A stretch of 64,000 nt of DNA from NCBI GenBank assembly GCA_024137785.1, contig JAHRHZ010000061.1, positions 1,824,066 to 1,888,065 of the forward strand, read 5' to 3'. A program made the position numbers and the translations under genes. The notes under the pieces were generated by a model. The model searched no databases. It saw nothing but the letters and a program-made list of their open reading frames with translations, and had not been told where the DNA came from. This document shows positions 1,499 through 45,509 of this stretch, in pieces; the first letter of the stretch is position 1; each line of letters opens with the position of its first letter. The DNA is from Ginglymostoma cirratum. Its lineage: Eukaryota.

Positions 1499-1529
1499 TG
1501 CCCAGACTCAATATCAAGTGCCGGACTTT
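1499..1529 (-). CDS. B7-family gene, 31-nt micro-exon after IgV (ESPALDIESG.., phase 1 to 2); gene continues beyond window start
   Basis: Minus strand: tttctcctgtttgtttcataacag|AAAGTCCGGCACTTGATATTGAGTCTGGGCA|gtaagt. Strong acceptor and donor; open in frame with the phase-1 IgV exon. Confidence 0.6.
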
Positions 1530-3046
1530 CTGTTATGAAACAAACAGGAGAAATGGTGCCCACAAGACTAGCCCTTCTCATGCTCACGTTTCCCATCAAG
1601 CTTTTATCTTATGCTTTTCCAAGATCCTTATCAGTGTCTAAGGCATTGCATCCATAAATCAGCTAAGCGTTGGCCATAAACTGAACTTTTACATTCTCAT
1701 CAAAGTGTATTAGTGGTCTACATCTTTTGAGATGTTTTCCATTTATTCAAACTATCCTGCAACACCATATTGAAAGTTGTTTATGTAATAAGTGTCCTTC
1801 TACTTTTCCAGGGTGTCTTTGAGATATGGATTGAAGGTGGCTTTTTTTGTATTGTGCAATGACAAAGGGTTAATTGATAATCTTGCTCTAAAGGAGACTT
1901 CAGAAAAGAGTAAACTTGATACGGTAGAATTTTTGATTAAGAGTGAAAACAATGTAGTTGAATCAAAAATAGGTTCTTCAATGTATACAAAGGAAAATGT
2001 GAAAATATAATGGGCAAATTACGGTGGCTAGGGAAAGTATATTAAAATGTCTAATAGTAAACAGGGAATGGTTTACATCTAAACTTTACAACAAAAATAC
2101 ATTCCTTTAATGCACAAGTGTTGAGTACCAGACAAGCACCATTGGTCCTGAGCTGTCTTGTATGGTTACCTGACATTTGCCCCGACATGGCAGGTAAAGG
2201 AAACTGGTGCCTCACTTTACAAGTTAGGCAAGTTATCCTACTTTGTTAGGAAAAACAGTTAGACAGAATATTTCTTAAATAGTAAGAAACTAGAAGAGGG
2301 AGTTTTAAAGACATGAGTCTCTGAAAGTCAACATGCAGGTACAGAAACCATTAACAAGACAAGTAATTTGTTACCTTTTACTACATGAGGATTTGAGTAT
2401 AGAAGTAAAAATGTTTTGCTACAAGTATAAAAAGCCTTTGTGAGACCACAGAATATTGTGTGCAGTCATGGTTTTCTTAGCTACTTGCCTTAGAGCGCAA
2501 CAAAAGCTAAACAAGTTAAACCCTGGGTTAGAAAGATTGTCCTATGAGGAAAGATTAAATAGAATGAGATGTGGAGGATGTTTTTCACTCATAGAATGGT
2601 GAATCTTTGGAATTTTCTATCCCACTGGCTGTGGAGGCTCCAACATTGCATATATTCAAGACTGAGATTGATAGAATTATAGATGTTAAAACATCAAGGG
2701 GCACAGGGATGGGAACATAAAAATTTTGTTCAAGTAGAAGATAAGCCAAAACCTCAATGAATGGTGGAGTCAGTCCAAGAAACAGAACAACCTATTCCTA
2801 CTTCTTATGTTCTTATGATGAATGGAGTTGAGGTAAAGATCAGCTCTGATCTAATGAATAGTGTTGACTGACCTCCTGTTTCCATTTTCTTAGGTAAGTA
2901 TTATTTAAAGTTTAGTTTGATATTATGCTTTAAACTTTGTTCTTTAAATCCTTGTTAAGTGTTAAATATTTTCACATTCTGTTAGTTTTTAAATTGCAAC
3001 TTAATTCATAGAAGACATTTTCAACAGAAAATTACATATTCCTGAC

Positions 3047-3373
3047 CAGCCACTTGTAGCAAAATGTCAATTTCTTGTTTCCCTTTAGACAAACTGATGT
3101 AACATTGGTACGTTCCTTCATCATTCTTGTTAATTCTTGAAAGCTGAAGCGATGCATTTCCTCTCATTATTTCATTTTTAAAAAGCTTTGTTCTTCCTCT
3201 GTAGTTTTGTTCTTGTCTCGATAGCTGATCTGTTCCTCGATAAAAGCTGTGAACTACAATGTTTTTAGGGCGCTTAATGCGCATCCAGTGAATCACTGCT
3301 TCAGATATTTGTGTTGGTTGAAATTTACATGGCAAAATGACATCCTTGGAAATGATACCTGTGATGCTCCCAT
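3047..3373 (-). CDS. B7-family IgV exon (HHLA2/VTCN1/CD276-like)
   Basis: Acceptor ttctctttccttttag, donor GCTG|gtcagg, 327 nt, phase 1-1. Encodes DVILPCKF..VIHW..VHSFYRGTDQLSRQEQNYRGRTKLF..GNASLQL..DEGTYQCYI, the B7/butyrophilin V signature. Confidence 0.92.
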
Positions 3374-3849
3374 CTAAAAGGAAAGAGAACAAGGATTATC
3401 TTTATTGTTGAAAAGAATATGCTTGAAATTTATGATCCAAATTTCAAAAACAGATCATGTTAATTAATTATAAAGTGAATGTTCACCAGCAATAATTATG
3501 CACAGTGTGGATCACTGTTTAGAGGCTGGCTTTTGGAACAGATTAACAAAATAGAGGTTTTGCGGCTAAACCTAGAATTGTGGCATGTAAAATTGATTTG
3601 TACTATTCCAAGAACATTGCCAGTATGCACAGATAACCACAGGTTTCCTAATGTTACTGCAAAACCGTTTTCTTAAACCTCTTTCCTCTACTTCTCCATT
3701 TCTATATCTAACAAAAAATGTGAGAAGCTCCTGGACTTCTTTATTAAGAAGATTGGGATCAACAAACTAACAGCATAAAATAACATGGCCACCTGAAACC
3801 ATCTACTTCTCCTCCCTGCTAAACCCTATTTAGGATGTATTGTCACTCA

Positions 3850-5296: not shown

Positions 5297-5360
5297 CTGT
5301 CGTCACAGCCTGGAGTTGCAAAATTGCAAAAACCTTAAAGCAGAGTATTTGACATAGCAT
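5297..5360 (-). CDS. B7-family gene, signal-peptide exon (MLCQILCFKVFAILQLQAVTT)
   Basis: acaaggATG start, hydrophobic leader, ACAG|gtaaca donor, 64 nt phase 1. Joins in frame to IgV (VTT-D-GSITG). Confidence 0.8.
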
Positions 5361-7559
5361 CCTTGTGCTTCTTTCTGTTCTCAATAGGCTGCATTTAAAT
5401 ATATCTCCACATATAATGTAGAAGGCAGAACTTATTCTCAGTGAACAGGCCAGGTCATTCCTTAAGAGTCATCTTTCTACTGTTAAAAAAAGACAAATTA
5501 TGAAAGAAAATCAACTGAACGAATGTATCTATAGCACACAAGTTGCACAATGTTCAATAAGAACATAGTGACTGTTGGTAAGTTTATGGCCAGCACTCAA
5601 CACTCGCAGGATAGCACTCAGAGCTGTCTTGTCCAATGTCCAGAGTGAGTGGATTCTCTTTTACTCAAAGCAACGAATTCGGACTTATTATGACACACTC
5701 AAGGGCAGTTGTGGCATCAGCCCAGACCTATTCACTCATGTCCTTTGGAGACAGAATTTTACTGTCCTTACCTGAGTTGGCCTACATGTTACTCCAGACC
5801 CACAGCAATGTGATTGACTCTTAATTGTCCTCTGGGCAACTAGGAAAGGGTAATAACTGCCAGTCTCACTGGTGATGCCCACATCCCGTAAATAAATAAA
5901 AAATTCAGGAGGACAGGGTTAACATATATGTGACTTGGATCAAGGTAGGATATTGAAAGTCTGGGCTGGCCACTAGACTATGTAGGAGTGATGAAATGAA
6001 CATTGAACATTTTGCAAACACACACAGAAAATATTATTCGTGATGGAAGCAAGGAAGGGAAAGAATATAGCAGAAGGAATAGAAGGGGTGAGAGGAAGAT
6101 AAGATTGCATCTTTACACACCTTTCGTGACCTCTGCATGCAATTTATATCCAGTCAAGTACTGTTTACGTTTTGTCACTGGTGCAATGTAGGTTACAGAC
6201 CATTTCAATTCTGTGGGAGAGCAAAAAACCTGATTGGAAGAATCCAAATAGATTTGTGGAAGAGATGTGCACTGATATGGAAGGTAACAAAATGTTTCAG
6301 ATGTTTGGAGAGGGAAGAAATGTAAATGAGAAAAGATAATTGAAGATGAATATTGTGCAGGAGGTTGATGACAGAGGCTATGAAACTGAAGCAAGGGAAC
6401 CGACCACTGGGGACCAGCAGTGGAAATGAGTGTTCAGGAATTTACTGGTAACAGTGTTGAGAAAACAAGTAAGGAGTCTCCCAGACAACTTGACTTGGAG
6501 TGTTCACTGACAGCAAAGGGAAAGAAAATGTGAAGAGATGAAAGACAAAGGAAGTTTTTCACTTAAAAGTGTCTTTCATGATCTGAGGATATTTCCAAGC
6601 AATTTCGAAGCAATTGTGTACTTCCTTCAAGTCAAATGAAGATAGGATATTAGATGGATCAGTAACTAAATATGTGGTAGGAGATGGGGGTGCATATGAC
6701 ATTATGAGCAAGGAAAATCAAGGAAGCAGCAGTGGCAGTCAAATGGATGGTCTTTAATGGTGAGGAAGAAACCCATAAATTCATTTTAAAGTCTGTTAGA
6801 TGTGAGGCTGGAGGGCTTAGATGAGGGGTATATGGTAACCAGTTAATAGTAGCTTTGCCACTCAGAATGATCCAAGAGAATTGGGTAATATCAGTCAAGC
6901 AGAGTAAGATCTAACAGCACTTATAGCAGACAATATTTGGTGACAGATGGTGAAACCAATTGTGCAGCAGCTAAATTCAGTGTTATGATTTTTTGGTCTT
7001 TACGTTGCAATCTGAGTTCACAAAACAAATTTAAAACCAGGCTCTAAAATCAACAGGAGGGAAAATAGGCAATCTATTTATAGCTTAAGGAAGAATGTTG
7101 AGCAGAACTCTAGGTGAACCCGTTATTCTTCTCACAAGACCATAAGACCATAAGATTTAGGAGCAGAATTAGGCCATTCGATCCATCAGATCTGCTCCAC
7201 CATTTAATCACAGCTGATTCATAAGGGTGTGTTGTTTATGTGAATTCACCTGTAACTCCAGGAGAATTTTGCGCCCATGCAGTGAACTGTGCAGCATCAG
7301 TGTCAGGAGTCTTGGAGAAGTTCCAACTTATGAAGGGGTCCCTTGTCTGGGGTCAGATATGTTGGAGGACAAACAGAAGAAAGGAACAGGAAGAAGTGAA
7401 AACCAAATTCAGGGCATTAATTGGGTGAATCTTACCAGAAATCCACTGTGATTTTTTATATGAGTTTCACGGAAGGTTTTTGTCTGTGAGTCTTTGTTAT
7501 CTTTGCAGACTCATCTTATTAACTATACAGCGTGCCTCTAAGGCACCCCACTGGTTGTA

Positions 7560-9786
7560 TTTGCCCACTCCCCATAGACAGAAGTATCTAGTGACTGCTG
7601 AGATCTCTTTCAATTCTTGCAGTGGTTGAGATAATTCTTTATCCAAAAGTTACACAATAATGTTTCTCCTTTTTGTGCCACCTACATTAAATTGCCTTCA
7701 TCCTTTCATACTTCACTAATATTACAATTTCCTGCTGCTATCAGGGAAGTGAAGGAACGGTTACCATCCAGTTGGCGAACTATAACTCCAAATGAGATCT
7801 GCTGTTGATGTGGGATTCTTGCCCATACTGCATCGGGGTAGAAATAGATAATAGATGGCCCAATGGAGAGGAAAGCCTAACAGCATATGCATGTAGGAAC
7901 ATGGCTAATGCAGAGGGTAAATATGCCCAGATAGAGAAGGAAGGTTTTGCATACATATTTGGAGTCAGGAATACCACCAATACCTTTTACAGACATAAAT
8001 TTGTAATAATAATGGACCACAAATCCCTGCTAGTCTTACTTAAAGAGGACAAGGTAGTGCTGCCCATAGGTGCGGGCCAAATTATGTGGTGGGCTATAAT
8101 ACTAAATGTGTATAATGAGGAGTTGGAACGCTGTTTGGGAGGTCAGGTAGCAAATGCGGATGGCTTGAGCTGCCTCCTGCTGGCAGATACACCACCAGTT
8201 GAAGGGTCTGTAATGGTTTCAAATTTTCTGGACGCACTTCCAGTCACAGCTGACAATATCAGACATTAGACGCAGAATGACCCGGTCCTGGCAAAATTGA
8301 AACAACTGGTGGTGATGGGGGACAGCAAAGGGCCATCATAACCAGAATTGAAACATTTCTGGACTCGGAGGGACCAGATCACCATAAAGGATGGCATATT
8401 ATTATGGGGAGCAAGAGTGATTGTTTCGAGCAAAGGTCACCATCGGGTACAGGCTGAACTCCACCAGGGTCATCCGGGGGTTTCCAAAATGAAGGTGTTG
8501 GCGGGAAGTCATGTACAGTAGCCAGGATTGCATGCAGGCAGCGAAACTTCGGAGGCGGGGGTGGGGGGCAGTGCCCAGAGTGCCAACAAGGTCAAAAATT
8601 ACCGCCTGCACCTCCTCCACATTCATGGAAATGGCGGGGTAAACCATAGACTTGGTTACATTTCATCTATGCAGGTCCTTTCATGGGCTTGATATTCTTA
8701 GCTATTGTGGATGCCCACTCAAAGTGGCTGGATGTTCACAGAGTTCATTCATCATGCACGGGATGATGACAGAAAAGCTGCATGCATTCTTTGCAATATA
8801 TGGACTTCCAGAAGTATTGGTCACAGATAACAGGCCGTCATTTACCAGCAGGGAATTTGAGTATTTCCTACCATTGGATGGTATTTGACATATAAGGACA
8901 GCTCTATACCATCCATCATTCAATGGTCTGACAGGAAGAACTGTCACAAGCTTTGAAGATGGGCTTAAAGGAACAGTCTACAGCTTTCTGTTTTCATCAG
9001 TTTTCTGATGAAGGGTTTAGGCCCGAAACGTCAAGTTTTCCTGCTCTTATGATGCTGCTTGACCTGCTGTGTTCATCCAGCCCCATGCTTGTTATCTCTA
9101 GTCTACAGCTTCATCTGATACCAAACTGTCCTGGTTCCTAAGTGATTATAGGACCAGCCCTCGTGCAACTACAGGGATAGCTCCAGCAGAGTTGGTGATG
9201 GAGAGAAGACTCCGCACCAGGTTAAATCTGATCTTCCCAGACCTGGGGGAGAGGGTGAAATGGCATCAGGAACACCAATACTGGACACAATACTCTGCTA
9301 AGAGAGACGGGCAGTTTACTTCAGGGGATGAGGTTTGGTGTAGAAACCACAGGAATGGCCCTGCATAGGTAAGAAACATGCCCAATGCGAGGTCAGGTCC
9401 AGTGATGTATAAAGTTCAGGTAGGTGCGATGATCTTAAACAAGCTCAGAGACGATATGGAAGACGCAAACTCACAAACGATGCAGGAGCAAAACGTGCCC
9501 GGCTCCTTAACAGCCTCTCTGACAGTTCCGGAACCCAGGAGTTTGCCCCCTCCATCAAGGCATACCTCGAAATCTGAGGTAGATACGGCAGATGTCACTG
9601 TCTCAACACCTTTGCCTCCTGAAGAGGAGAATGAATTTCTTCCGAGACACTCTGGGTGCAAATGCTGTGTGTTACACGCTGCCCATATCAGAGGCAGAGT
9701 TGAAGGAACATGACCCGATGCTAAACCCCCAGGAGGAGCTGCAAATAAAAAGAACCAGCATATGTCCTCGGACATGGGGTTGGATT
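7560..9786 (+). mobile_element. Degenerate Ty3/Gypsy LTR retrotransposon pol remnant (RNase H, integrase)
   Basis: AEGKYAQIEKEG..IFGV and MDHKSL (RNase H); LHQGHPG (H2C2); LVTDNRPSFTSREF and YHPS-NGL (integrase core). Multiple stops and frameshifts. Confidence 0.85.
8987..9099 (+). mobile_element. Family A short PLE-terminus insertion with hammerhead motif (9001-9036)
   Basis: 12-bp TSD agtctacagctt (8975-8986 / 9100-9111); CTGATGA-a-GGGT ttag GCCC-GAAA-CG-TC. Confidence 0.85.
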
Positions 9787-12664
9787 TGTGGTGATTGTAA
9801 TGAGGTCAGCCAGGCGGACCTCATAGAACATTACTTACTTATTAGTAAGTAATGAAATTAAATCAATAGCAAGAAACGATGTACAATCAAATGATGTAGG
9901 ATCTGTGTGGGTAGAGTTGTGGAACTGCAAAGGTTAAAAAAGACCATAATGGGAGTTATGTAAAAGCCTCCAACCAGTAAACAGGATGTGGGGCAGAACG
10001 TACACCAGGACATAGAAAAGGTTTGTAAGAAAGGCAAGGTTACAGTGATCGTGTGAGATTTTATTAAGTAGGCGGACTGGGAAAATCAGGTTGGTAGTGG
10101 ATTGCAAGAAAAGGAATTTGTGAAATGTCTATGAGATGGCTTTTTGGAGCAGCTTGTGGTGGAGCCCACTAGGGAACAGGCAATACTGGAGTTAGTGTTG
10201 TGCAATGAGGCAGACTTGATAAGGGAGCTTAAGGTGAAGGAAATCTTAGGAGGCAGTGACCATAATATGACAGAATTTACTCTGCAATTTGAGACGGAGA
10301 AGCTGGAATCAGATTTAACAGTATTACAGTTGAATAAAGGCAACTACAGAGGCATGAGGGAGGAGCTGGCCAGAATTGACTGGAAGAGGAGCCTAGCAGG
10401 AAAGACAGTGGAACAACAATGGCAGGAATTTCTGGGAGTAACTTGGGAGACACAACAAAAATTCATCCCCAGGAAAAGGTAACATACTAAAGGGAGGACA
10501 AGGCATTCATGATTGACAAGGGAAGTCTGGGACTGCAGAAGTGCAAAAGAGAAATCATATAATGTGCTGAAGGTCAGTGGGAATCCAGAGGATTGGAAGC
10601 CTACAAAGACCAAGAGAGGACAACAAAAAAAGAAATAAGGAGGGAGAAGATTAAACATGAGGGTTAGCTAGCCAGTAATTTAAACAAGATTGCAAGAGTT
10701 TTTTTTTAGATATATAAAGGGCAAAAAAAGAGGCAAAAGTGGACATTGGGCTGTTGTAAAATGACACTGGCGAAGTAGAAATGATAGAAAAAGAAATGGC
10801 AGAGGAACTGAACAAGCACTTTGTGTCAGTCTTCACTTCGGAAGACACGAGTAACGTCCCAAAAATTCAAGAGAGTCAGGGGGCAGAGATAAGTATGGTG
10901 GTCATCACCAAGGAGAAGGTACTGGAAAAACTGCAAGGTCTGAAGGTGGATAAATCACCTGGACCAGTTGGACTACACCCGAGAGTTCTAAAGGAGATAG
11001 CTGTAGAGATAATGGAGGTGTTAGTGGTGATCTTTCAGATTCGCTGGAGTCAGGGAGGGTCCCGGAGGACTGGAAATCGCTAATGTAACCCTTCTGTTTA
11101 AGAAGGGAGTAAGGCAAAAGACAGGAATTTATAGGCCGCTTAGCCTGACCTCAGTTGTTGGTAAGATTTTGGAGTCCATTGTGAAGGATGAGATTTCTGA
11201 ATACTTGGAAGTGCATGGTAACATAGCACAAGTCAGCATGGTTTCATCAAGGGGAGGTCATGCCTGACAAATCTGTTAGAATTCTTTGAGGAGGTAAGGA
11301 GCAGGTTAAACCAAGGAGAGCCAATGGATGTTATCTACCTGAACTTCCAGAAGGCATTCGACAAGGTTGCACAGGAGACTGCTGAGTAAGATAAGGGCCC
11401 ATGGTGTTAGAGGCCAGGTACAGACACAGATAGAAGATTGGCTGTCTGGCAGAAAGCAGACAGTGGGGTTAAAAGGGTCCTTCTCAGAATGGCAAATGGT
11501 GACTAGTGGTGTTCCACAAGGGTTAGTGTTGGTACCACAACTTTTCACTTTATGTATTGGTGATCTAGATGAAGGAACTAAGGGCATTCTGGTCAAGTTT
11601 GTAGAAAATACAAAGATAGGTTGGGGGACAGGTGGTATTGAGAAGGTGGGGAGACTGTAGAAAGAGTTAAACAGGTTAGGAGAGTGGGCAAAGAAGTGGC
11701 AGATGGAATGCAATGTGGGAAAGTATGAGGTCATGCACTTTGGTAGGAAGAACAGAGGCGTATTTTCTAAATGGGGAGAAAATTCAGAAATCTGAAGGGA
11801 CTTGTGAGTCCTAGTCCAGGATTCTCTTAAGGTAAATTGCAGGTTGAGTTGGTGGTTAGGAAGGCATTTATTTCCTGAGGACTAGACTATAAAAGCAGGG
11901 ATGTACTTCTGAGGCTTTATAAAGCTCTGGTCAGGCCACATTTAGGGTATTGTGGGCAATTCTGGGGCCCATACCTCAGGAAGGATATACTGGCCCTGGA
12001 CCGGGTCTAAAGGAGGTTCACAAGAATGATCGCAGGAATTAAAGGCTTAAGGAATGTTTGAGGACTCTGGGTCTATACCCAATGGAGCTTAGAAGGATGA
12101 GGGGGGATCTACTTGAAACATATAGAATACTGAATGGCCTGGATAGAGTGAATGTTGGGAAGATATTTCCATTGGTAGGAGAGACTAGGACCTGAGGGCG
12201 CAGCCTTAGAGTAAGGGGAAGACCTTTTAGATCAGAGATAAGGAGAAACTTCTTCATTCAGAGAGTGGTGAATCTATGGAATTCACTGCTATAGAAGGCT
12301 GTGGAGGCCAGGTCATTGAATTTATTTAAAATGCATATAGATAGGTTCTCAATTGGTCAAGGGGTCAAAGATTACAGGGAGAAAACAAGAAAATAGGTTT
12401 GAGAAACTTATCAGCCATGGTGGAGCAGACTCATTGGGATGAATGGCCTAATTTCTGCTCCTATGTCTTATGGTCTAATATGAGTTCCCAGATTGGGGCT
12501 ATAAATCTGGTCCAATCAAGGATCTCCAGCTGACAGATAAAAACAGGAGTGTCAAAGGTTTTGAGAGCTGGCTCTGAGGGAGCTGTATCAGTGTCAAGGA
12601 CTCTTTGCATGTAAATAAAGGGTGACTTGGTAACAGGAAACCTGCCTCTGTGGAGTTTTTTTCA
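9787..12664 (+). repeat. Gypsy 3' LTR split by a CR1 insertion (9787-~9830 plus ~12479-12664)
   Basis: Starts TG after a G-rich tract and ends CA. The halves rejoin as cctcatagaa|tatgagttccc; AATAAA at ~12614. Confidence 0.55.
9831..12478 (+). mobile_element. 5'-truncated CR1 LINE, disrupted ORF2 (endonuclease end plus RT)
   Basis: PTREQAILELV, GSDHN, KSPGP-GLHPRVLKE, SGVPQG; 3' tail cctatgtcttatggtc. Confidence 0.9.
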
Positions 12665-13304
12665 GTAATCACTTAAAATGAGTACAGTTCTCTATTGTAT
12701 AAATGTGACAGTGACTGCAAATATGGTTCTGAGAATCTTTTTGGGTGCATCAAAGCAAACAACGTTAGCTGTTTGAATCTAACCATTAGGCATATCATTC
12801 ATGCAAATCAGGAATGTGTGTTCCTGTTGCAGACTACTGTACAAAGTTGGCCACATCATCTGATATGATATGGTAAACCAACTACAGGTTTGTATTTTAC
12901 AAAATTTTAACCTAGATGAAACAGGAAGGATCTCTCTGGCTTTATTTTGAAGCTGCAGTCTCTTACCAGTCACGAGTCACACACCAACCCTTTATCTTTA
13001 TTCCTCCAGCTCTCTGAACTCAACTAGCGTTCCCATCACTCAACTTTCTTCATTTTCATCACTAACTTGCATCTCCAGGTGTAATTAACATTCCTAGTAA
13101 AGTGGCTGTCGTCTGAAGACATTTTCTCTGGACAATTTTGTGGGGTCTTCTCTCCTGCTTGCACTCAAATCCAAGTGCTACCCAATTCATAAATCGCTCA
13201 TCTTCACAACATTTATACCATTTCTTGAACAGTAATTTCACCAATGCTCCAAAAGCAAGTTGAGTCTAATTTGCAGAGAGGCCCCCATCTAAAACCATTA
13301 AACT

Positions 13305-14660
13305 ATAAGATGTAGGGACAGAAACAGGCCATTCAGCCCATCAAGACTGCTCCACCATTCAAAGAAATCATGGCTGATCTGACAATCTTCAACTCCATTC
13401 TCCTGCCTCTTGGCTATAGCCTTATTTGCTTTTATTTATTTATTCATGGGATGAGGGTATCACTGGGTGGGCAGCGTTCATTGCCCATCCCTAATTGATC
13501 AGAGGGCAGTGCAGACTCAACCACATTATTGTGGGTCTGGAGCCACATGTAGGCCAGAACAGGTGAGGACAGCAGTTTCCTTCCCTAAAGGACATTAGTG
13601 AACCAGATGGGTTGTTCCTGACAATTGACAATGGATTCATGGTCATCATTAGATCCTTAATTCCAGATTTTTTTACTGAATTCAAATTCCATCAACTGCC
13701 ATGGCAGCATTCAAACCTGGGTCTCCAGAACATTATCTGAGTTTTTGGATTAACAGTCTAGTGATAATACCACTAGGCCGTTGCTTACCCATAAGCTTTG
13801 TTATTACCTATTTCTTAACCATTCAAAATGCTGTCTATCTCAGTCTTGAACACACTTAATGACTGAGGCCTGATAACACTCTGTGGTAAAGAATTCTACT
13901 TAATCACTACACTCCTTATCTCTGTGCTGCACATTATGCTGATATTATGCCCTTTGGACCTAGACTCTCCCACAGGGGGAATCAATCTTTTCCTATCTAC
14001 CCTGTCAAGTCCCCTAAGAATCTTGTATATTCAAAAAGGCCCCATCTCATTTTCCTACGTCCCAACAAGTACAGGCCCAAACTACTCAACCTCTCCTTAT
14101 AAGCCTGTCCCTCCATACACTTGTCTTGATTAGATAAGGTTAAGTAATCCAGTTGAATTGTGATTGGTGCCTTGCAGTTCAGCAAAATCACCCTATTTTT
14201 ATGTTCCATTCCCTTTGAAATAAAGGCTAATATTCCATTTATCTTCCTTATTGGTTTCTGAACTTTTTTGCTAACTTTTCGAGATTTATTCACAAAGGTT
14301 CCCAAATCCCTCTGTTTTGTAACTCTCTGCAGTCTTTTTTATTTAAATCACATTCAGTGCCTCTTTTCTCTTTGCCAAAATGCATAGCCTCACATTTGCT
14401 AACATTGTATTTCATGTGCCAAGTTCTTGCCTACTTGCTTAACCTGTCTATATCCCTCTGCAAACTCTTCTGTAAAATTCTCACCACTTGCTTTCCTTTT
14501 TGTGTCATATGCAAACTTGGTGCCAGTGCATTCGGTTTCCTCATCCAAGTCATTTATAAAATTTATTAACATTCATGGCCCCAGCACTGATCACTCTGGT
14601 GACGTGTTACTGATTAAAGGTTGCAATCCTGAAAATGCCCCCGTTACCCAAATTCTCTGT
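13305..14660 (-). mobile_element. Degenerate CR1 LINE 3' fragment interrupted by a SINE
   Basis: Minus-strand RT C-terminal remnants (LSSLGLY..RRKMRWGL..Y) and a CR1 3' UTR. Confidence 0.7.
13440..13790 (-). mobile_element. tRNA-headed SINE family B (other copies ~17635-17900 -, 32820-33140 +, 34405-34745 -, 38635-38965 -, 40105-40435 -, 60905-61260 +)
   Basis: Recurrent ~350-nt unit: B-box-like ggttcaaatc head, core ccttccctaaaggacattagtgaaccagatggg, tail cccatgaatgaataaa. Confidence 0.75.
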
Positions 14661-16582
14661 CTTGTGTTAGCCAATCCTTCAACCACACTATTGTACCACC
14701 ATTCCAAATCCACACCTCCAGCCCACACCAATAACCCCTCATGTTTTCGTGTAGCCTACTCACTCCCTCAAAAACTCCTCACCACCTTTTGTCCAACTGC
14801 ACCATGATTAAGAGCTGTGCCATTCACTTTGATCTCCCTCAATCCCTCCTTTTTGATCATTCCAGGAGAAGGCAGCCCATCACAGAGCAGAGAGAGCCCC
14901 TGTAGATGTGGTGGTGACGGACATTAGGTTCCACGCCCCTATGAGGAGAGAACCTGGCTATCGCAGAAGAAGACAGGAACTGCTCTTGAGAGGATCCTGA
15001 GACATCCATGTGCTGTCAAGTGAATAAGCACCACTCATCATTCCACCACAACTCTCACATTAACCTTATTGTAATCAATATCTATTGAACAGAACTGCTA
15101 TCTACTGGCCACATCATCAGTCTCATGCAGGCATAGCCAGCTTGTCTATCATGACTGTGGTGGAATGCCCAGCTCTCCCAAAAGTCACATCCCCAGCATT
15201 TGAGGATGAGAGTATAGCGGCTGCCTCCTGTATTGCCCACTGGCTCTGATACTGACTCCTCAGTGGGAACATTAGAGAGCGTGGGAGCACAAGCTGGTGA
15301 GCACCTCACTGCGGCAGCTCCTCGGCTTTTGAAGGAAGAAATGCCCCAGGCACCTAGGCACTTGAAGGGAGATCAGGCACAGCCCTGGCACACAATGACC
15401 CAATGGCCTCAGCACCCAGGGCCCTTTTAGGCCTTCCTTATATAACATCCATATTCCTTTGCAGCCCCTGTATCCAAAACAGCTGGAGTGAATGAATTGT
15501 TCAGTGATGCCTGTGGCAGGGTGATGCAACACACAGAAGACGGGCAATCCCTTAAGGTGGCTAGGGAACTGGAACCCTGCAGGTCCATGTCCGATACAGT
15601 ACATGGGTCTGTGTGCAAGGTTCTTTCCTTTAAATGCCCTCATGTGAATGGGGACCAGAGGCTCCACTCTCACGGGGCGAGTCACTAACCCTGCTGTCAG
15701 AAACATTTTCTTCCTGATTGCATACTTTTGTTTTCCATGACGGAAGGCAACAGTGGGTGCTCCTCAGTCAGTGGCTTGTAGACTCCGCCTCAACATTTCG
15801 GTAAATCCCTAATTATCCGAACACATTTCCTGGCAGCTTTTTCTGTAAACCAGGCCGGTTTCACATCTCCCCAGATCCGCGGCCAACCCTCCTTCATGAG
15901 CCTGCATTTGCCCACCTTTCCATTCAGCCCCTGGCATATGAGGTGCCCATGCTAAGTATGGACATTCACTGCACTCCACCACTGCCCCACCATCATATGA
16001 AGCCAGGGTGCTGTTGACAGAGGATAACCCCAATTACCCACCCAGCCACCACCACCCATGCGACACAAGCCCCTCCCACAGATACTCCTGAGCCTTGACA
16101 GACTTCTCGTTCAATTCTACAAAACTCCACATACCCCACCTCACTTATACCCACATTAGATTCCACCCAGTTTTTTTTAAGTTAGTGAAATAAAAAAATC
16201 TTGCTTACATCTGTGACAATTCAGGAAATTGTGTGTCTGTGGAAATCAGACATGCACAAAATCAAGCTTGAATAAATCAAATCATGACTCTGTCATATGA
16301 ACTTTCAAATTAATCAAAGTCCAGCACTAACGATCAAGCCACAGCATAATTTAAACTTGATTACAACTTTCATAACGTTTAAAATCAGCTTACTTACATT
16401 TTCCAGATTTCTTTCAGTCCACTTTGTCCTGCAGCTTCTTTTACATTTTAGTCCCTTTTTACTACTCACTAAACTTTAACATTTTTAAGCTGACTTGAGG
16501 TGGAACTACTTGCAAAATGATTCACCTTTGGAACAATCCACACCCATCACAAAGCAATTTGACACACCTCATTTTTACTCAC

Positions 16583-16721
16583 ATTGAACATATCGTATAT
16601 CTTTACAGCAACGACTTAGTGTGAAAGAGAAAAGAATAGTCGTCACTAGGATCAATTCAGGCATTGCTCCAGGAGTTGTAATCCCATATTTGGCAGGTGG
16701 AGGAACTTGAATCTCAAACAT
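16583..16721 (-). CDS. Candidate alternative or orphan leader exon (MFEIQ...MPELILVTTILFSFTLSRCCKDIRYVQ)
   Basis: In-frame ATGs at 16721 and 16664, hydrophobic core, CAAT|gtgagt phase-1 donor compatible with the B7 IgV exon. Lies in non-repetitive sequence. Confidence 0.35.
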
Positions 16722-17049
16722 CTACTGTTAAAAGTCTTCTATAACCATGAAAATATTGTTGATTGCTCAAGAAGGGGATAACTAATAATACTTGAAAATG
16801 ACATTTACTGGAACTCCACTTTGAAATTTTGAAAAAGACAAGTCAGACCAGTAAGTGTCATTCACAAGTTGTGCTGTTTTCTTTTCCCTTTTCTGGGATC
16901 ATAACAGTCCTCCTGATTGACTAATCCCATTTCAGAAAGAAATCTGCTCTCTTTACCTAATCTGGGTGAGGTGCAATTTCAAATGCACAGCAATCTGGTT
17001 GACCCTTAACTGCCCTCTGAAATGACTCAGTAATTTTATTCAAATTGTT

Positions 17050-20000: not shown

Positions 20001-20240
20001 AGCTGAATTCCAGATGTCAGGTGAGAGTGACTTCCCTTGACATCAAGGCTATATTTAATTAAATGTGGCATCAAGGAGCCCTAACAAAACTGGAATGAAT
20101 AGGAAGTAAGGAGAAACCTGTTCCTCTGATTTGAGGTACACCTGCCACAAAGGAATATGGTTGTCATTGTAGGAGGCCCAGCATCTCAGCTCAAGGACAT
20201 CTCTGCATGTGTTCTTCAAGGTCGTGTCCTGGGCTCAACC
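17050..20240 (+). mobile_element. Degenerate CR1/L2-group LINE (APE plus RT remnants) interrupted by a SINE and a PLE
   Basis: GTFNIHHQDW and TRGKNILHLILTN (APE); RT remnants at 19920-20240 ending in a QGxVLG-like motif. Confidence 0.7.
18216..19915 (+). mobile_element. Penelope-like element (RT C-terminus plus GIY-YIG) with inverted termini
   Basis: NVVYYILCSR..HIGETKWRLRDRFVEH..VANHF. Inverted arms ~18220-18305 and ~19786-19870; 12-bp TSD ctgttcactgat (18204-18215 / 19916-19927). Confidence 0.9.
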
Positions 20241-20479
20241 AAGGAGGAAGATTTCAAAGTGAAAGGCCCAGGAGGTTTAGAGGGTTTTTGAGGAAAATGG
20301 TTTTCACCTGGAGAGTGATGGGGGCCTGGAATGTACTGCCTTTAAACTTCACAGCCTTTAAAAATTACATGGTGAGCATTTGAAATATCGTAATACTCCA
20401 AGCTATGGGCCTGGTGCTGGAAATTGGGACTAAAGTGTAGATTTAGTGTAGATTTGGTGGTACAGACTTGTTGGGCCTT

Positions 20480-26188: not shown

Positions 26189-26317
26189 GAGATAAAAGGT
26201 ACTGCAGATGCTGGAGAATCCGAGATAACAAGCATGGGGCTGGATGAACACAGCAGGTCAAGCAGCATCATAGGAGCAGGAAAACTCGATGTTTCGGGCC
26301 TAAACCCTTCATCAGAA
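26189..26317 (-). mobile_element. Family A short PLE-terminus insertion (single 129-nt arm)
   Basis: 9-bp TSD atttgatca (26180-26188 / 26318-26326); hammerhead core at its 5' end. Confidence 0.85.
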
Positions 26318-26422
26318 ATTTGATCACTTGGGAAAGTGCAGCAGAGATCTAGCTCTATGTTTTGTCTCTCCCACTCACTGTTATACTTTCTGATTCTCAA
26401 AATTATAGCCTGTTAGTGAAGT

Positions 26423-26428
26423 TTTATT
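26423..26428 (-). terminator. Candidate polyadenylation signal of the receptor gene
   Basis: AATAAA on the minus strand about 125 nt after the TGA at 26551. Confidence 0.45.
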
Positions 26429-26550
26429 ATTTAACATCACCTTTAAAAATGGGTGAACAGTTTTGGCTACTTTCATAACAGAAATGCACGGCAGCCTCGA
26501 AACATTTTGAATAGTGCCATAGACAGCCTTTGATGAAATAGATTGCCAGC

Positions 26551-26675
26551 TCAATTATTGCAAGGGTATTGGCCAAGCAGTGAGTAGACGACATTATCGT
26601 CATTGTTTAGTTGTTCTCTCGCATGTTGTTCACTTTCAGGCTCAGCTGCATTCTTTAATGATGAAACATTTTTTT
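26551..26675 (-). CDS. CD28-like VJ-C1 receptor, terminal cytoplasmic exon with ITIM
   Basis: Acceptor tgtttgttttactgcag, phase 1. KNVSSLKNAAEPESEQHAREQLNNDDNVVYSLLGQYPCNN*; VVYSLL fits (I/V/L/S)xYxx(L/V). Confidence 0.8.
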
Positions 26676-29155: not shown

Positions 29156-29223
29156 CTACCTACAGAAAACAATTTGGGATTAAAATAAAGTTAGAATTAA
29201 ATCTGAAAACCATGACTACTTAC

Positions 29224-29328
29224 TTGAAAATGTACGTGTACAAAGTATTGCAACAACCACACACACCATCAATGCAACTAAACCATTAACTGTTGGTAAT
29301 ATCCACAATCCTCTGTTGCTGGCAGAAC
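29224..29328 (-). CDS. CD28-like VJ-C1 receptor, transmembrane exon
   Basis: ttctcaacag|GT TCT...TCA A|gtaagt, 105 nt phase 1-1; GSASNRGLWILPTVNGLVALMVCVVVAILCTRTFS. Not in the supplied ORF track. Confidence 0.85.
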
Positions 29329-31658: not shown

Positions 31659-31964
31659 CTTGGTTACAAATAGGAATCCTTTTAGTGGTGGGTGCAGAAA
31701 GAGTTGAGTGGTTCACTTGACAGGAATATATTCCAGTTGCATTCTGCTCAAGTACAGAAAGATTCAGGGCACTTGTGAAAGAGAATGAGCCATCACTGTT
31801 GGTATAGAGAGTCTCATTCTTAATGTCATTGGTGATTTGCTGTCCATCTTTAAACCAGGACACTTGAATGTCATCAGGATAGAACTCCAGTGATGTGCAG
31901 ATTAACTCTCTCTCTTCATTAGGGTAAGGTTGAGTCCTTTCAATTAACTGGACGGTTGGCTGAG
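31659..31964 (-). CDS. CD28-like VJ-C1 receptor, Ig C1-set exon
   Basis: gattttcag|CT CAG CCA...CAA G|gtgaaa, 306 nt phase 1-1. AQPTVQL..LICTSLEFYPDDIQVSWFKDG..NSDGSFSFTSAL..YSCQVNHSTL carries the C1 motifs FYP and YxCxVxH. Confidence 0.92.
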
Positions 31965-34948: not shown

Positions 34949-35348
34949 NNNNNNNNNNNNNNNNNNNNNNNNNNNNNNNNNNNNNNNNNNNNNNNNNNNN
35001 NNNNNNNNNNNNNNNNNNNNNNNNNNNNNNNNNNNNNNNNNNNNNNNNNNNNNNNNNNNNNNNNNNNNNNNNNNNNNNNNNNNNNNNNNNNNNNNNNNNN
35101 NNNNNNNNNNNNNNNNNNNNNNNNNNNNNNNNNNNNNNNNNNNNNNNNNNNNNNNNNNNNNNNNNNNNNNNNNNNNNNNNNNNNNNNNNNNNNNNNNNNN
35201 NNNNNNNNNNNNNNNNNNNNNNNNNNNNNNNNNNNNNNNNNNNNNNNNNNNNNNNNNNNNNNNNNNNNNNNNNNNNNNNNNNNNNNNNNNNNNNNNNNNN
35301 NNNNNNNNNNNNNNNNNNNNNNNNNNNNNNNNNNNNNNNNNNNNNNNN
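34949..35348. other. Assembly gap (400 N) inside a TSD-flanked family A insertion
   Basis: N run; flanking TSD tggatctttga at 34922-34932 / 35438-35448. Confidence 0.95.
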
Positions 35349-36493: not shown

Positions 36494-36541
36494 GAATGGT
36501 AAAACTGTGATGTTTTTTGAGTTGCGAATATAATAACTCAC

Positions 36542-36901
36542 CTTCTACTGTAATGCGTGTACCTTTACCTCTTGCTGATTGTGAAGGAGGTGGAATTTCA
36601 AAATCAACCTGACAGAAGTAAATGTCAGTATCACTTAAATGAAGATCGTGGATTATTAAAGATGAGGATTTTGTTGAGGAGTCCACCGTAATGCTAGCAC
36701 GTTCTGTGCAATGCATGATAGAAGAATAATTAATTTTATTTTCCATGTGATGGCAGAATAATTGTGTACTGGTGTTACGCTTCCACATAATCCGGAACTG
36801 TTCAACTGTATCACTGTATGAACAATTTATTTGTACGTTGTCCCCCTTCAATGCTCTGATCTCTGATGGTGTTTGGAATACTGTTAGTTTTTTGCTCCTC
36901 A
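36542..36901 (-). CDS. CD28-like VJ-C1 receptor, germline-joined VJ-type IgV exon
   Basis: ttttaatttcttcag|TG AGG...GAA G|gtgagt, 360 nt phase 1-1; INCSYS..EQFRIMW..LFC..MHC..TDIYFCQVDFEIPPPSQSARGKGTRITVE. Confidence 0.92.
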
Positions 36902-37074
36902 CTGAAGAAATTAAAAAACAAAAATGATTAACAATATATTATTTCTGATCAGTGGTGAATGTATCATGTAGCTGGGTGTAGTTTGTAGTTTAGTGAATTG
37001 AGTCAATATAAAGACATTATGAATCTCTTTTCCTGAAAAGAAGTAAATGGAATTGAATGTAGTGTAGATTGCAT

Positions 37075-43000: not shown

Positions 43001-44050
43001 ACCAGGCTAGTAGATCTTTCATTTCTTGTTTTATGTATCCCTCCTTTCCTAAGGGACTGAAGGGTCTGTTTCTGTGCTGTAGAAGTCTCTGACTCTATGA
43101 CTCGATACATGTGTAACCTTCTGATCTGCAGGTATCATTGCCTAATCATTAGAATTTTGAAAGATCATCACTAAGGCATCCAATATCTGTGTAGTCATCT
43201 TTTTTGACACTGAAGGTCAGCAGGTCCCAGGGATTTATCAACTTGCCATCCCATTAATTTTCCAATCTGATATGTTTACTAATACTAATTTCTTTCAGTT
43301 CCACACTCTCACTAGAGTCTTGGATTAACTGACAAAAGTCTTCTTGTGTCTTCTATTGTGAAGAAAGACATAAAATACACGTTCAATTTTTCTGCCATTT
43401 CTATATTTCCTATTACTAATTCATTTGTGTTTGCCTGTATTTGAACCACATTTGTCCTTTGCTAATCATTTGCTTTTCTCTTCTCTATAAATGCTTTTAA
43501 CGTCTGTCTTTATATTTCTTGCTATATTATATTCATATCCTATTCTTTCTGAAATTCTACTAATTCTCAGGCTTACATATAAGCCTTCTTCTTTGATCTA
43601 ATATTTATTTTAACTTCCTTTGTTAACCATGACTGTTTTGTTTCTCCTGTTGGGTATTTTTATGTTATAATGAATATGTTTTCACAGTGAGTTTTTTGGT
43701 TCTTTAAATAGTAGCCAACGTTTTATGTACTTCAAACCTTACAATGTATTTTTGATCCACCACAGCAAATTTTCTACTTGGCCTTTATAATTGCCCTTGT
43801 TATCATTTAAGATCATAGTTTCAGATTGAAATACAACTTTTTCAAACCTAATTCTGTAAAACTATGGTAAATATTAAAGTTTGTATTACACAGAATTATC
43901 AATTAGCCATTTCTCACTGCATAATATTAAAGGTAAAATAGCTAGTGCCCTCAACCTATTTCTTCAGAAAATTCTCACGTACAGGCAATCTTCCTCCACA
44001 GCTCTCAACCGAAACCTGATTGTGACCCTGTTGTGTCATACCATATGTCA
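37075..44050 (-). mobile_element. Cluster of nested, degenerate CR1 LINE fragments and SINEs (intron 1 of the receptor)
   Basis: RT remnants in ORFs 37892-38080, 41998-42276 and 42883-43110; CR1 tails (ttctatg)n at ~39990 and (acaaaga)n at ~41850. Confidence 0.75.
41610..41843. mobile_element. Fold-back PLE-terminus (family C) with degenerate hammerhead
   Basis: cagcaggtctggcagcatctgt...ttcttcaga is inverted against tctgaagaagagtc...acagatgctgccagacctg. Confidence 0.7.
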
Positions 44051-45445
44051 TAAAAGTACAACGTTATAAATATTTCATCAATTAACTGCACAAGCATCTA
44101 GTCATTTTGCATAAGTCTCAGGCTTTTTTGGAAATAACGTTTGAACTCACTGTTCAAAATGACTTTCTGACCTTAATTTCCCAGAACTGAAAAAAAAAGC
44201 ACATTAACTTCTACTGTGAAATCCAAATTCCCAAACAATAACTTATTGTGAACTATTGTCACACTTTTTGTATACTTCTAGCATGTGGTACTGGGAGCAA
44301 TCCTGAGAATACTGCCTTAGTGGTCCTGCTTTTCAGTCATATGCTGGGCTTCCTAAATTTTACTATCAGGACTTTATCCCTCTTTCTACTGAGGCCACTG
44401 ATGCCAAAACTATCATGACTTCTGGCTGTTCATCTCCCCAAAAGAATGTCTTGCAGCCACACTGTGAGATCCTCAAACCTGCATCATCAAGGCAACATGC
44501 CAATCAGAAGTCACATAAGGCCACAGAAATGCCTGTCAGTTCCCAGAACCATTGAACCACCTGTCCACTCTTCCTCCCTACCCTCAGTGCAGCTGAGCCA
44601 CCTGCTGTGACAAAAGCTTGACTCTCATTATGATCCTCAGATGAACAATTGTCCTCACCAGTTTACAAAAGGGGTTTGTGAACGAGATAGATTTTGGGGA
44701 TTTCTGCACTACCTACCTGTTCTTTCTAGACTGACCTTTCATTGTCTAGTCTTAATTAGCAGTGTGACCAATTTATTAATAGTGCTATCCACATAACTCT
44801 CAGCTTTACTGATGCACCATTGTGACTCCAGCTGCAGTTCAAGTTCCAAAACCAAGAGTTTGACATTTCGCAGCTGAAGATACTTCTTGATCATCTAGGC
44901 CACATGAAGCATCCACTATTCCCAAAAAGGATAGGCATTCCACATAATTGAACTGTCCTGCCATATCCTAACTCATTTAGACATTCCAGCACCAACATGT
45001 CAAATTAAATCGTTTGTTTCCTTGTTCTGAGCTGGCTGTTTTCATTGTTTTATGCTTTACTTTGAAGTTTCTTCTGGCTGTCCTCCCCTTATCGCTTTCA
45101 CAATACAATACGAAATCCCAAAGCACTTGATTGAAATAAAGAGAAGCAAATATTTGGATGAGGATTAAGCTTCATGACTAAGGCAGAGCCAAAGAGTAAG
45201 GTTTTGAGAAGGCTTTATGTCTTAAGAAGGAAAGAAATATTGATGGGAATATCATGAAAGTTTTGGGTACATTTTTAAAGTTACTTTGTGACTAATACCT
45301 GTAGTATTATATCCAATGATTTGTAAAGTTCAAGTAAGGAATATTTCTGTTTGTCAGAAAATATTTCTATCATTTCTTTCCTCCTTCTGCAATTCATTGT
45401 GACTGTAATTACTCATTAATGATGTTAGACCTGAATTTGTCATAC

Positions 45446-45509
45446 CTGCAAGTAGAAAAAAACGAAGCAGAACACAAAGTTTGAATACTTGTGACCCCAG
45501 AGATGTCAT
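45446..45509 (-). CDS. CD28-like VJ-C1 receptor, signal-peptide exon (MTSLGSQVFKLCVLLRFFLLA)
   Basis: gaaATG start, hydrophobic leader, GCAG|gtatga donor, 64 nt phase 1. Joins as ..LLA-V-RSKKLTV. Confidence 0.75.

What the first reader, a model, noticed from the sequence alone, without database searches (positions are those of the whole stretch)
1499..45509. CD28-like receptor sits directly upstream of a B7-family ligand-like gene: a possible linked receptor-ligand pair
Seen in sequence: both genes are on the same strand, about 21 kb from receptor stop to B7 ATG, with no other recognisable gene between them. Established knowledge: CD28-family PPP loops bind B7 IgV domains (CD28/CTLA-4 with CD80/86, ICOS with ICOSL), TMIGD2 binds HHLA2, and those pairs are unlinked in humans. 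Inference: a co-inherited costimulatory/checkpoint module that may reflect ancestral linkage.
Basis: inference. Interest (0 to 1): 0.8.

Follow-up and report, generated by a model that had tools for sequence, protein, structure and literature searches.

The report
Shark inhibitory CD28H-like receptor beside HHLA2
A shark gene for an inhibitory immune receptor, whose tip carries the loop of the human T-cell receptor CD28H, lies 21 kb upstream of the shark version of HHLA2, the molecule CD28H binds; this makes them a testable receptor-ligand pair, but binding is not shown.

Summary
Both genes are on the minus strand. The receptor's stop codon ends at 26551 and the B7 start codon is at 5360. The 21,190 bases between them hold only transposon debris.

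Both genes need renaming.
- The "CD28-like receptor" is a 319-aa protein of five exons: leader, V domain, C1-set constant domain, membrane anchor and a tail with an ITIM (VVYSLL). It is not a single-V CD28 member.
- Its V domain carries YFCQVDFEIPPP...GKG. That is the published signature of CD28H (TMIGD2) in its cartilaginous-fish form.
- The "B7" is the shark HHLA2/B7H7 orthologue. Only its leader and IgV1 exons lie in the window.

It remains an inference.
- There is no binding test.
- There is no transcript support for HHLA2 in two RNA runs.
- The only cross-species evidence is that both genes share a chromosome in one skate.
- The receptor family was found only in sharks and rays, so linkage older than elasmobranchs is unsupported.

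The N gap lies in the V-to-C1 intron. A full-length zebra shark orthologue is colinear across it.

This scan had already noted this receptor, and a sister gene on nearby DNA.

The parts
45446..45509 (-). Receptor exon 1: ATG and signal peptide (MTSLGSQVFKLCVLLRFFLLA), phase-1 donor
   Evidence: Aligns to residues 1-21 of zebra shark P0209.
36542..36901 (-). Receptor exon 2: VJ-type V domain. FG loop is YFCQVDFEIPPPSQSARGKGTRITV. There is an extra invariant cysteine pair.
   Evidence: Pfam V-set 55.5 bits and ICOS V-set PF15910 35.6 bits against a cut-off of 28. CD28 E=3e-6. EIPPP invariant in 17 sequences. AF2 pLDDT 91.8 with PPP at the F-G turn. CTLA-4 is the top Foldseek hit.
34949..35348 (.). 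Assembly gap (N) inside the V-to-C1 intron; not filled
   Evidence: Flanks are dispersed repeats. The orthologue is colinear across it.
31659..31964 (-). Receptor exon 3: C1-set constant domain (…FYPDDIQVSWFKDGQ…YSCQVNHSTL…)
   Evidence: Pfam C1-set, E=1.6e-10 on the partial ORF and 68.7 bits in whale shark P0001. Splice sites.
29224..29328 (-). Receptor exon 4: stalk and transmembrane segment (LWILPTVNGLVALMVCVVVAILC)
   Evidence: Aligns to P0209 242-280.
26551..26675 (-). Receptor exon 5: cytoplasmic tail with ITIM VVYSLL, then stop (TGA 26553-26551)
   Evidence: The tail motif (V/I/A/T)xYxxL-GQ is conserved in all type-A orthologues.
5361..26550 (.). Intergenic spacer of 21,190 bases with transposon remnants only
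   Evidence: Pfam hits RT_RNaseH, rve, RVT_1, GIY-YIG and Exo_endo_phos_2, or none. No Ig exon by tblastn.
5297..5360 (-). HHLA2/B7H7 exon 1: ATG and signal peptide (MLCQILCFKVFAILQLQAVTT), phase-1 donor
   Evidence: Matches the N-termini of basking shark P0037 and skate HHLA2 P0156. Sequence.
3047..3373 (-). HHLA2/B7H7 exon 2: IgV1 domain, intact, with both canonical Cys and the Trp
   Evidence: Pfam V-set. 72% identical to basking shark P0037, 51% to skate HHLA2 and 52% to frog HHLA2. Splice sites.

Best explanation
Shown:
- The minus strand carries a complete five-exon gene for a 319-aa type I membrane receptor.
- 21 kb downstream on the same strand lie the first two exons of the shark HHLA2 (B7H7) orthologue.
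- The receptor has a signal peptide and a germline-joined V domain. The FG loop of that domain is EIPPP followed by a GxG bulge.
- The FG loop is in the same register as the CTLA-4 MYPPPY...GNG loop, recalled from my own knowledge.
- It also has one C1-set domain, a membrane anchor and a short tail with one ITIM.

Inferred mechanism:
- The EIPPP loop at the membrane-distal tip engages the IgV face of a B7-type ligand.
- The ITIM tyrosine is then phosphorylated and recruits SHP-1/2, giving an inhibitory signal.
- HHLA2 next door is the leading candidate ligand. The only EIP(PP)-loop receptor with a known partner, CD28H/TMIGD2, binds HHLA2 IgV1.
- On this reading the shark receptor is an inhibitory counterpart of CD28H encoded beside the shared ligand. 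It would play the role that KIR3DL3 plays for HHLA2 in primates.

How likely: I put the gene anatomy at about 0.9, inhibitory signalling at about 0.7, and HHLA2 as the ligand at about 0.45. The confidence below refers to the pairing.
For: Gene models:
- Consistent AG/GT, phase-1 exons.
- Exon-for-exon colinear with zebra shark P0209 of 319 aa.
- The whale shark model P0001 joins leader, V and C1.

V domain:
- Pfam PF15910 above its cut-off.
- CD28 is the best solved structure that is not an antigen receptor.
- The AF2 model has pLDDT 91.8, with PPP at the F-G turn.
- CTLA-4 takes ranks 1-2 in Foldseek.
- The motif YxC[EKQN]xxxEIP is the published CD28H/CD28HL signature. EIPPP is reported for CD28H of chondrichthyans, for example skate ...IEIPPP...GNG (PMC11599192).
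- EIPPP is the longest invariant run across 17 shark and ray sequences of both paralogue types.

Ligand:
- Orthologues at 72%, 55% and 51% IgV1 identity are V-C-V-TM proteins.
- The skate orthologue is named HHLA2 by NCBI.
- The best hits outside elasmobranchs are frog and salmonid HHLA2.
- CD28H binds HHLA2 IgV1, and HHLA2 also has an ITIM receptor, KIR3DL3 (PMC10173190).

Linkage elsewhere:
- The skate receptor P0192 and skate HHLA2 P0156 both lie on the 60,892,660-base chromosome.
Against: - No binding or complex prediction could be made.
- The motif match covers a short loop. CD28HL1 and CD28HL2 also carry EIP loops, and their ligands are unknown.
- The region is rich in Ig-superfamily genes, so neighbours can be incidental.
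- Two RNA runs give essentially no reads on the HHLA2 exons.
- In Amblyraja the two protein accessions are 1,070 apart. Adjacent paralogues in Carcharodon and Mustelus have consecutive numbers. If numbering follows map order, the skate genes are not close neighbours.
- In rays the residue two before the tail tyrosine is A or T, so the ITIM is canonical only in sharks.
- Another report of this scan (s1-878914) found that a similar-looking receptor-plus-B7 neighbourhood was not a working pair.
Confidence: 0.45

Rival explanations
1. The neighbourhood is incidental. The V-C1 receptors are a SIRP-like paired-receptor family: an ITIM form here, and a sister form with an arginine in the membrane segment nearby. 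They bind some other ligand, such as another B7 homologue (B7-H3/B7-H4 type), a CD47-like protein or a pathogen decoy. HHLA2 merely lies in the same Ig-superfamily-rich region.
For: - NCBI names several orthologues 'SIRP-alpha-like', 'tapasin-related-like' or 'Ig light chain-like'.
- The ESM Atlas lists SIRP-alpha, tapasin-related and CD200-like clusters as nearest by features and structure.
- The best solved-structure match of the full-length orthologue is shark UrIg2 V-C1.
- The architecture, V plus C1 plus ITIM with a sister carrying a charged membrane segment, is that of SIRP alpha/beta.
- The skate accession numbers are far apart.
- There is no HHLA2 RNA in two runs.
Against: - No SIRP chain appears among the 60 best sequence matches of the V exon, whereas CD28 does.
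- The FG loop is the CD28H signature, not a SIRP loop, and it is invariant over the whole family.
- Foldseek puts CTLA-4 first.
Confidence: 0.4
2. One partner is not functional in this genome. The HHLA2 copy is truncated or broken beyond the window start, or silent, so no working pair exists here.
For: - Only two HHLA2 exons can be seen.
- There is no IgC, IgV2 or TM exon in 1-3046.
- RNA runs X7 and X8 show at most a read or two, and those are unspliced.
Against: - Both visible exons are intact, with correct splice sites and phase.
- An earlier first-reader note places an HHLA2-like TM exon 15.5 kb before the window start (s1-878920, unchecked).
- Full-length V-C-V-TM orthologues exist in basking shark, catshark and skate. 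Twelve complete ORFs sit on 1.7-5.9 kb Logan contigs, a size expected for transcripts.
Confidence: 0.1

Closest known systems
CD28H (TMIGD2) and its ligand HHLA2 (B7H7)
   Same: - The V domain has the family signature YxC[EKQN]xxxEIP, in the EIPPP form reported for chondrichthyan CD28H, followed by GxG.
- The neighbouring gene is the HHLA2 orthologue, and CD28H binds HHLA2 IgV1.
   Different: - CD28H has a single V domain, a YxNx activating tail and fsd1/stap2 synteny (human 19p13.3).
- This gene has an added C1-set domain and an ITIM tail, and it lies beside HHLA2.
- In humans the receptor and the ligand are on different chromosomes.
CTLA-4 / CD28
   Same: - The FG loop is in the same register: six residues between the F-strand Cys and PPP, then GxG thirteen residues on (my own knowledge of the CTLA-4 sequence).
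- CTLA-4 is the top structural neighbour of the modelled V domain.
- Like CTLA-4 relative to CD28, it would be the inhibitory sharer of a ligand.
   Different: - The loop reads EIPPP, not MYPPPY.
- It has an extra C1 domain.
- It carries a classical ITIM rather than the YVKM motif.
- It is not in the CD28/CTLA4/ICOS cluster.
KIR3DL3, the primate inhibitory receptor for HHLA2
   Same: It is an ITIM-bearing Ig receptor that would compete with CD28H for HHLA2. The match is one of function.
   Different: It is unrelated in domain type (KIR D0-D1-D2), restricted to primates and unlinked to HHLA2.
SIRP alpha / SIRP beta paired receptors
   Same: - A J-like V domain followed by C1-set domain(s).
- An ITIM form, and a sister form with a basic residue in the membrane segment.
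- NCBI auto-names several orthologues SIRP-alpha-like.
   Different: - One C1 domain instead of two.
- One tyrosine motif instead of four.
- The V domain is closer to CD28 than to SIRP and carries the EIPPP loop.
UrIg / UrIg2, the non-rearranging VJ-C1 genes of elasmobranchs (PMC12227049)
   Same: - A germline-joined V exon followed by a C1-set exon.
- Found in elasmobranchs.
- UrIg2 is the best solved-structure match of the orthologue's C1 region.
   Different: - UrIg genes have four to eleven C domains and no ITIM.
- They map to the MHC or the antigen-receptor complex.
- They lack the PPP loop.
CD200 / CD200R, a linked receptor-ligand pair on human 3q13 (my own knowledge, not tested here)
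   Same: A precedent for an Ig-superfamily receptor and its ligand encoded close together in the same chromosomal neighbourhood as HHLA2.
   Different: The families are different, and the CD200/CD200R pair is experimentally proven.

Membership tests
CD28 family as defined by Quiniou et al. 2024 (PMC11599192) | [quoted passage not shown] | tested here: not met
   A C1-set exon (31964-31659) lies between the V and TM exons. All 17 orthologues are V-C1.
CD28 family as defined by Quiniou et al. 2024 (PMC11599192) | Conserved CDR3/FG-loop motif (PPP or EIP) followed by GxG | tested here: met
   The loop reads YFCQVDFEIPPPSQSARGKG. EIPPP is invariant in 17 sequences.
CD28 family as defined by Quiniou et al. 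2024 (PMC11599192) | V domain recognised by the ICOS/CD28-type profile (Pfam PF15910) | tested here: met
   35.6 bits against a cut-off of 28. The profile is also listed for nearly all orthologues.
CD28H (TMIGD2) orthologue | YxNx tyrosine motif in the tail | tested here: not met
   The tail has a single tyrosine, in VVYSLL, which is an ITIM.
CD28H (TMIGD2) orthologue | Synteny with fsd1 and stap2 | tested here: not met
   In the window the only neighbour is HHLA2. No fsd1 or stap2 exon was seen. Flanks beyond the window could not be read.
HHLA2 / B7H7 | IgV1-IgC-IgV2-TM architecture | tested here: inconclusive
   Only the leader and IgV1 are in the window. Orthologues with 51-72% identical IgV1 (P0037, P0155, P0156) are V-C-V-TM.
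HHLA2 / B7H7 | Closest named relatives outside the lineage are HHLA2 rather than B7-H3, B7-H4 or butyrophilins | tested here: met
   - Frog HHLA2 is 52% identical at 108 bits. The salmonid hhla2b match scores 96 bits, level with two teleost proteins auto-named 'CD276-like' (95.5-95.9 bits). 'VTCN1-like' and butyrophilin-like proteins score lower.
- The skate orthologue is named HHLA2.
- The PDB holds no HHLA2, so the top VTCN1 hit is uninformative.
HHLA2 / B7H7 | Synteny with BBX (human 3q13.13 neighbourhood) | not tested
SIRP family | V domain followed by two C1-set domains, and a tail with several ITIM/ITSM tyrosines | tested here: not met
   One C1 exon and one tyrosine motif. No SIRP chain appears among the 60 best sequence matches of the V exon.
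Receptor-ligand pair (functional claim) | Direct binding of the receptor V domain to HHLA2 IgV1 | not testable with these tools
   No complex prediction or assay is available. There is no solved HHLA2 or TMIGD2 structure to model on.

The most novel reading that the evidence does not exclude
Elasmobranchs encode a paired-receptor system for HHLA2 directly beside it. One member is the ITIM-bearing V-C1 receptor in this window. The other is a sister gene with an arginine in its membrane segment. Both were built from a CD28H-type V exon and an antigen-receptor-type C1 exon. If so, the activating/inhibitory control of HHLA2 seen in humans (CD28H versus KIR3DL3) was invented independently, hundreds of millions of years earlier, as a linked ligand-receptor cassette. 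The family could also point to receptors for the still-orphan relatives B7-H3 and B7-H4.
Probability: 0.3. Interest if true: 0.8.

Novelty: new variant of a known kind. Interest (0 to 1): 0.6.

Why it matters
- B7/CD28-type checkpoints are central to immune control and to cancer therapy, yet in humans no receptor of this class is encoded next to its ligand.
- Here a receptor with the CD28H binding loop, an added constant domain and an inhibitory tail sits beside HHLA2. That gives a concrete, cheap binding experiment.
- If binding is positive, it shows that dual control of HHLA2, by one activating and one inhibitory receptor, is ancient.
- It would also show how a checkpoint receptor can be assembled by exon shuffling between the CD28 and antigen-receptor lineages.
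- It would add a family that the 2024 survey of CD28 relatives does not list.
- If binding is negative, the family is still an undescribed elasmobranch paired receptor, and the neighbourhood is simply part of an Ig-rich region.

Tried and rejected
1. B7-H4/VTCN1 identity for the ligand. VTCN1 is the best solved-structure hit (79 bits) and is the NCBI name in basking shark. I rejected it for three reasons. The orthologues have three Ig domains. Frog HHLA2 also hits CD276 and VTCN1 best, because the PDB holds no HHLA2. The nearest named relatives are HHLA2.
2. A germline-joined Ig light chain or TCR chain for the receptor. TCR V-alpha is the best sequence hit and NCBI uses 'light chain-like' names. 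I rejected it because the gene has a TM exon, an ITIM tail and the EIPPP loop.
Only chromosome lengths and accession numbers could be compared.
4. Transcript support for HHLA2.
   - RNA runs X7 and X8 cover only an intronic repeat at 3834-4115.
   - A read or two at 2988-3175 cross into the intron.
   - X1 and X2 look like genomic DNA contigs.
   - I used the single read-laying run on the HHLA2 exons. The receptor's V-to-C1 junction therefore rests on orthologue models, not on reads.
5. The ESM Atlas gave only generic Ig leads.
6. Literature searches for the family or for the EIPPP motif found no description. PMC3709836 is not held.
7. I did not search the joined, spliced protein model. Exons were searched one at a time by reference, and full-length orthologues returned by the tools served as stand-ins.
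8. I read the CD28H sequences in the paper's supplement but did not type them into any tool, so no V-domain tree against CD28H, CD28HL or CD28X was built.


Full report
**What is in the window.** The window has one N run, 34949-35348. The three Ig-type ORFs in the window are all on the minus strand. One is a V domain at 36.5-36.9 kb, one is a C1-set domain at 31.6-32.0 kb, and one is a B7-type V domain at 3.0-3.4 kb. tblastn with each exon against the window finds no further copies.

**The receptor gene.** Reading the minus strand gives five exons with canonical AG/GT sites, all in phase 1.
- Leader: 45509-45446, with the ATG at 45509.
- V: 36901-36542.
- C1: 31964-31659.
- Stalk and TM: 29328-29224.
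- Tail: 26675-26551, with TGA at 26553-26551.

The exon lengths add up to 319 residues. I did not search the joined model. Instead I searched the V-exon ORF by reference. That search returned whale shark P0001 at 93% identity, a RefSeq model that joins leader, V and C1. Its 90% cluster holds zebra shark P0209, which has 319 aa. P0209 aligns to the five window exons one after another, with no residues left over.

**The gap.** The N run lies in the intron between the V and C1 exons, so frame is not in question.
- Both flanks are dispersed repeats with many 80-95% copies in the window, a usual cause of assembly gaps.
- The exons on either side have the right order, strand and phase.
- The orthologue shows that no coding exon is missing there.

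I have no read-level proof of the V-to-C1 junction in this genome, because the single read-laying run went to the other gene.

**What the receptor is.**
- The V exon passes Pfam V-set, and also the ICOS/CD28-type profile PF15910 (35.6 bits against a cut-off of 28).
- Among solved structures its best sequence matches are TCR V-alpha and antibody V domains, which reflects its J-like GKGTRITV.
- CD28 is the best match that is not an antigen receptor (E=3e-6).
- An AlphaFold2 model built with 16 relatives has pLDDT 91.8. It places P103-P105 at the turn between strands F (92-102) and G (from 107).
- Foldseek ranks human CTLA-4 first and second, although antibody V domains follow closely.
- The loop reads YFCQVDFEIPPPSQSARGKG.

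Quiniou et al. 2024 (PMC11599192) define CD28H and its paralogues by YxC[E/K/Q/N]xxxEIP. They report EIPPP only in reptiles and chondrichthyans. Their examples include skate CD28H ...IEIPPP...GNG and epaulette shark ...IEIPPP...GNG.

That survey lists nine family members, all with a single V domain, and none has a C1 domain. The second Ig exon here is a clear C1-set domain. The tail carries one tyrosine, in VVYSLL, which fits the ITIM consensus. The molecule is therefore a hybrid: a CD28H-type V domain, an antigen-receptor-type C1 domain and an inhibitory tail.

**The receptor family.** A search with P0001 found 17 proteins, all from sharks and rays. The genera include Carcharodon, Scyliorhinus, Pristiophorus, Heptranchias, Mustelus, Stegostoma, Heterodontus, Pristis, Mobula, Amblyraja, Leucoraja and Chiloscyllium. 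NCBI names them light chain-like, SIRP-alpha-like, tapasin-related-like or uncharacterised. They fall into two types.
- Type A, to which the window gene belongs, ends in xxYxxLGQ. This is a canonical ITIM in sharks. In rays the residue two before the tyrosine is A or T.
- Type B has a conserved arginine inside the membrane segment and a different tail, as expected of an activating partner.

The two types have consecutive accession numbers in Carcharodon and in Mustelus. An earlier report of this scan places a second V-C1 gene 79.5 kb beyond this window (s1-879685).

Across all 17 sequences EIPPP is the longest invariant run in the V domain, and two extra cysteines are also invariant. The full-length orthologue's best solved-structure match is shark UrIg2 V-C1, which reflects the C1 domain. 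UrIg genes are otherwise different (PMC12227049). I found no paper that describes this family.

**The B7 gene.** The IgV exon runs 3373-3047, with a good acceptor and donor. Its leader exon is at 5360-5297. I found it by similarity to the N-termini of the basking shark and skate orthologues, and it ends in ACAG|GTAACA. Joining the leader and V exons gives ...AVTT-D-GSITG..., which matches ...LRST-D-GSSIG... in basking shark.

No IgC, second V or TM exon is detectable in 1-3046. The gene therefore runs off the window start, and the finding's lower coordinate, 1499, marks nothing I could recognise.

**Which B7 it is.** By sequence, the best solved structure is human VTCN1/B7-H4 (79 bits). That is not informative, because the PDB copy holds no HHLA2. 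A frog protein named HHLA2 likewise hits CD276 and VTCN1 best.

An exhaustive search with the IgV exon gave these results.
- The best single-domain hit is a basking shark protein (P0037, 367 aa, 70-72% identical).
- After it come the proteins outside elasmobranchs for which I looked up names: frog HHLA2 (50-52%) and salmonid hhla2b.

P0037 and its full-length relatives in catshark, a batoid and skate are V-C-V-TM proteins. The skate one is named HHLA2. V-C-V is the HHLA2 architecture, whereas B7-H4 is V-C. An unchecked first-reader note places BBX about 150 kb away (s1-879590), and BBX is a neighbour of human HHLA2 at 3q13. I conclude that the gene is the shark HHLA2/B7H7 orthologue.

**Between and around the genes.** ORFs in the 21 kb spacer match only retroelement domains or nothing. 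A LINE ORF of 650 aa, with endonuclease and RT domains, lies just upstream of the receptor. Rfam finds only one tRNA-like match, at 57270-57341.

- In humans CD28H binds the IgV1 domain of HHLA2. HHLA2 also has an inhibitory ITIM receptor, KIR3DL3 (PMC10173190).
- Here a receptor with the CD28H loop and an ITIM lies next to HHLA2.
- Its loop is invariant over the whole family, as expected of a binding site.
- In the skate Amblyraja the receptor (P0192) and HHLA2 (P0156) are both on the 60,892,660-base chromosome. A random gene would be there only a few per cent of the time. That estimate is mine, and conserved macro-synteny makes the agreement less striking than it sounds.

The case against it is as follows.
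- Nothing here tests binding.
- CD28HL1 and CD28HL2 also have EIP loops, and their ligands are unknown.
- The skate accessions are 1,070 apart, which may mean the genes are not close there.
- Two RNA runs show no HHLA2 exon coverage. X7 has a read or two at 2988-3175, and these run into the intron. The runs that hold the exon, X1 and X2, look like genomic DNA. This is no proof of silence.
- The receptor family was found only in elasmobranchs, using a word-based search of limited reach. Linkage 'ancestral' to jawed vertebrates is therefore not supported. A lineage-specific exon-shuffling origin next to HHLA2 fits as well.
- IgV1 of HHLA2 and the receptor V diverge at similar rates: 72/70% to lamniforms, 61/65% to catsharks and 51/49% to skates. 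That is compatible with co-evolution but is also ordinary for immune Ig domains.

**Verdict.** The receptor-ligand reading is a reasonable and readily testable hypothesis, at about 45%, and it is not demonstrated. The main rival, at about 40%, is a SIRP-like paired-receptor family with another ligand that merely neighbours HHLA2.

This scan had already noted this receptor (s1-879090) and its sister gene on other DNA (s1-879685). What is new here is the identification of the neighbour as HHLA2 and the match of the loop to the published CD28H signature.

Noticed in passing
window 31628-31658 (minus strand, just past the C1 exon donor): Reading through the C1 donor gives a short tail, GEKKSICWIC, then a stop. 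The whale shark RefSeq model P0001 ends with the near-identical GEKKSIHCIC. This may be a secreted V-C1 isoform, or only recent common ancestry.
   Followed up: partly
orthologues P0208, P0188, P0191, P0185 (sister gene; per s1-879685 about 79.5 kb beyond the window end): The type-B paralogues keep the EIPPP V domain and the C1 domain. They have a conserved arginine inside the membrane segment and no ITIM, which is the pattern of an activating partner in a paired-receptor system.
   Followed up: partly
window 3834-4115: A short dispersed repeat inside HHLA2 intron 1 draws depths of hundreds to thousands in the polyA RNA run X7, and huge word depths in X1 and X2. It shows many variant joints. 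It is a very abundant, transcribed SINE-like element.
   Followed up: no
window 46770-48722 (minus strand): A 650-aa open reading frame with endonuclease and reverse-transcriptase domains (LINE) lies 1.3 kb upstream of the receptor's start codon. It continues in neighbouring frames to about 45940.
   Followed up: partly
window 57270-57341 (+): The only Rfam match in the window is a tRNA-like sequence (38.4 bits), set among repeat-like ORFs. It is probably a tRNA-derived SINE head rather than a tRNA gene.
   Followed up: no
window 4233-4523 (-) and 18835-19611 (+): Two copies of the same element share the motif ...VRNKRQHLPVANHFNSPSHS...HNDATRKLEEQH.... A GIY-YIG-like piece lies at 22919-23203. 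They may be Penelope-type retroelement remnants.
   Followed up: no
PMC11599192: The 2024 survey reports CD28H as missing in great white shark. Yet that species has both V-C1 genes (P0180, P0186), and a fellow lamniform, basking shark, keeps HHLA2 (P0037). If great white also keeps HHLA2, the V-C1 receptors could be its only EIPPP-loop partners there.
   Followed up: no
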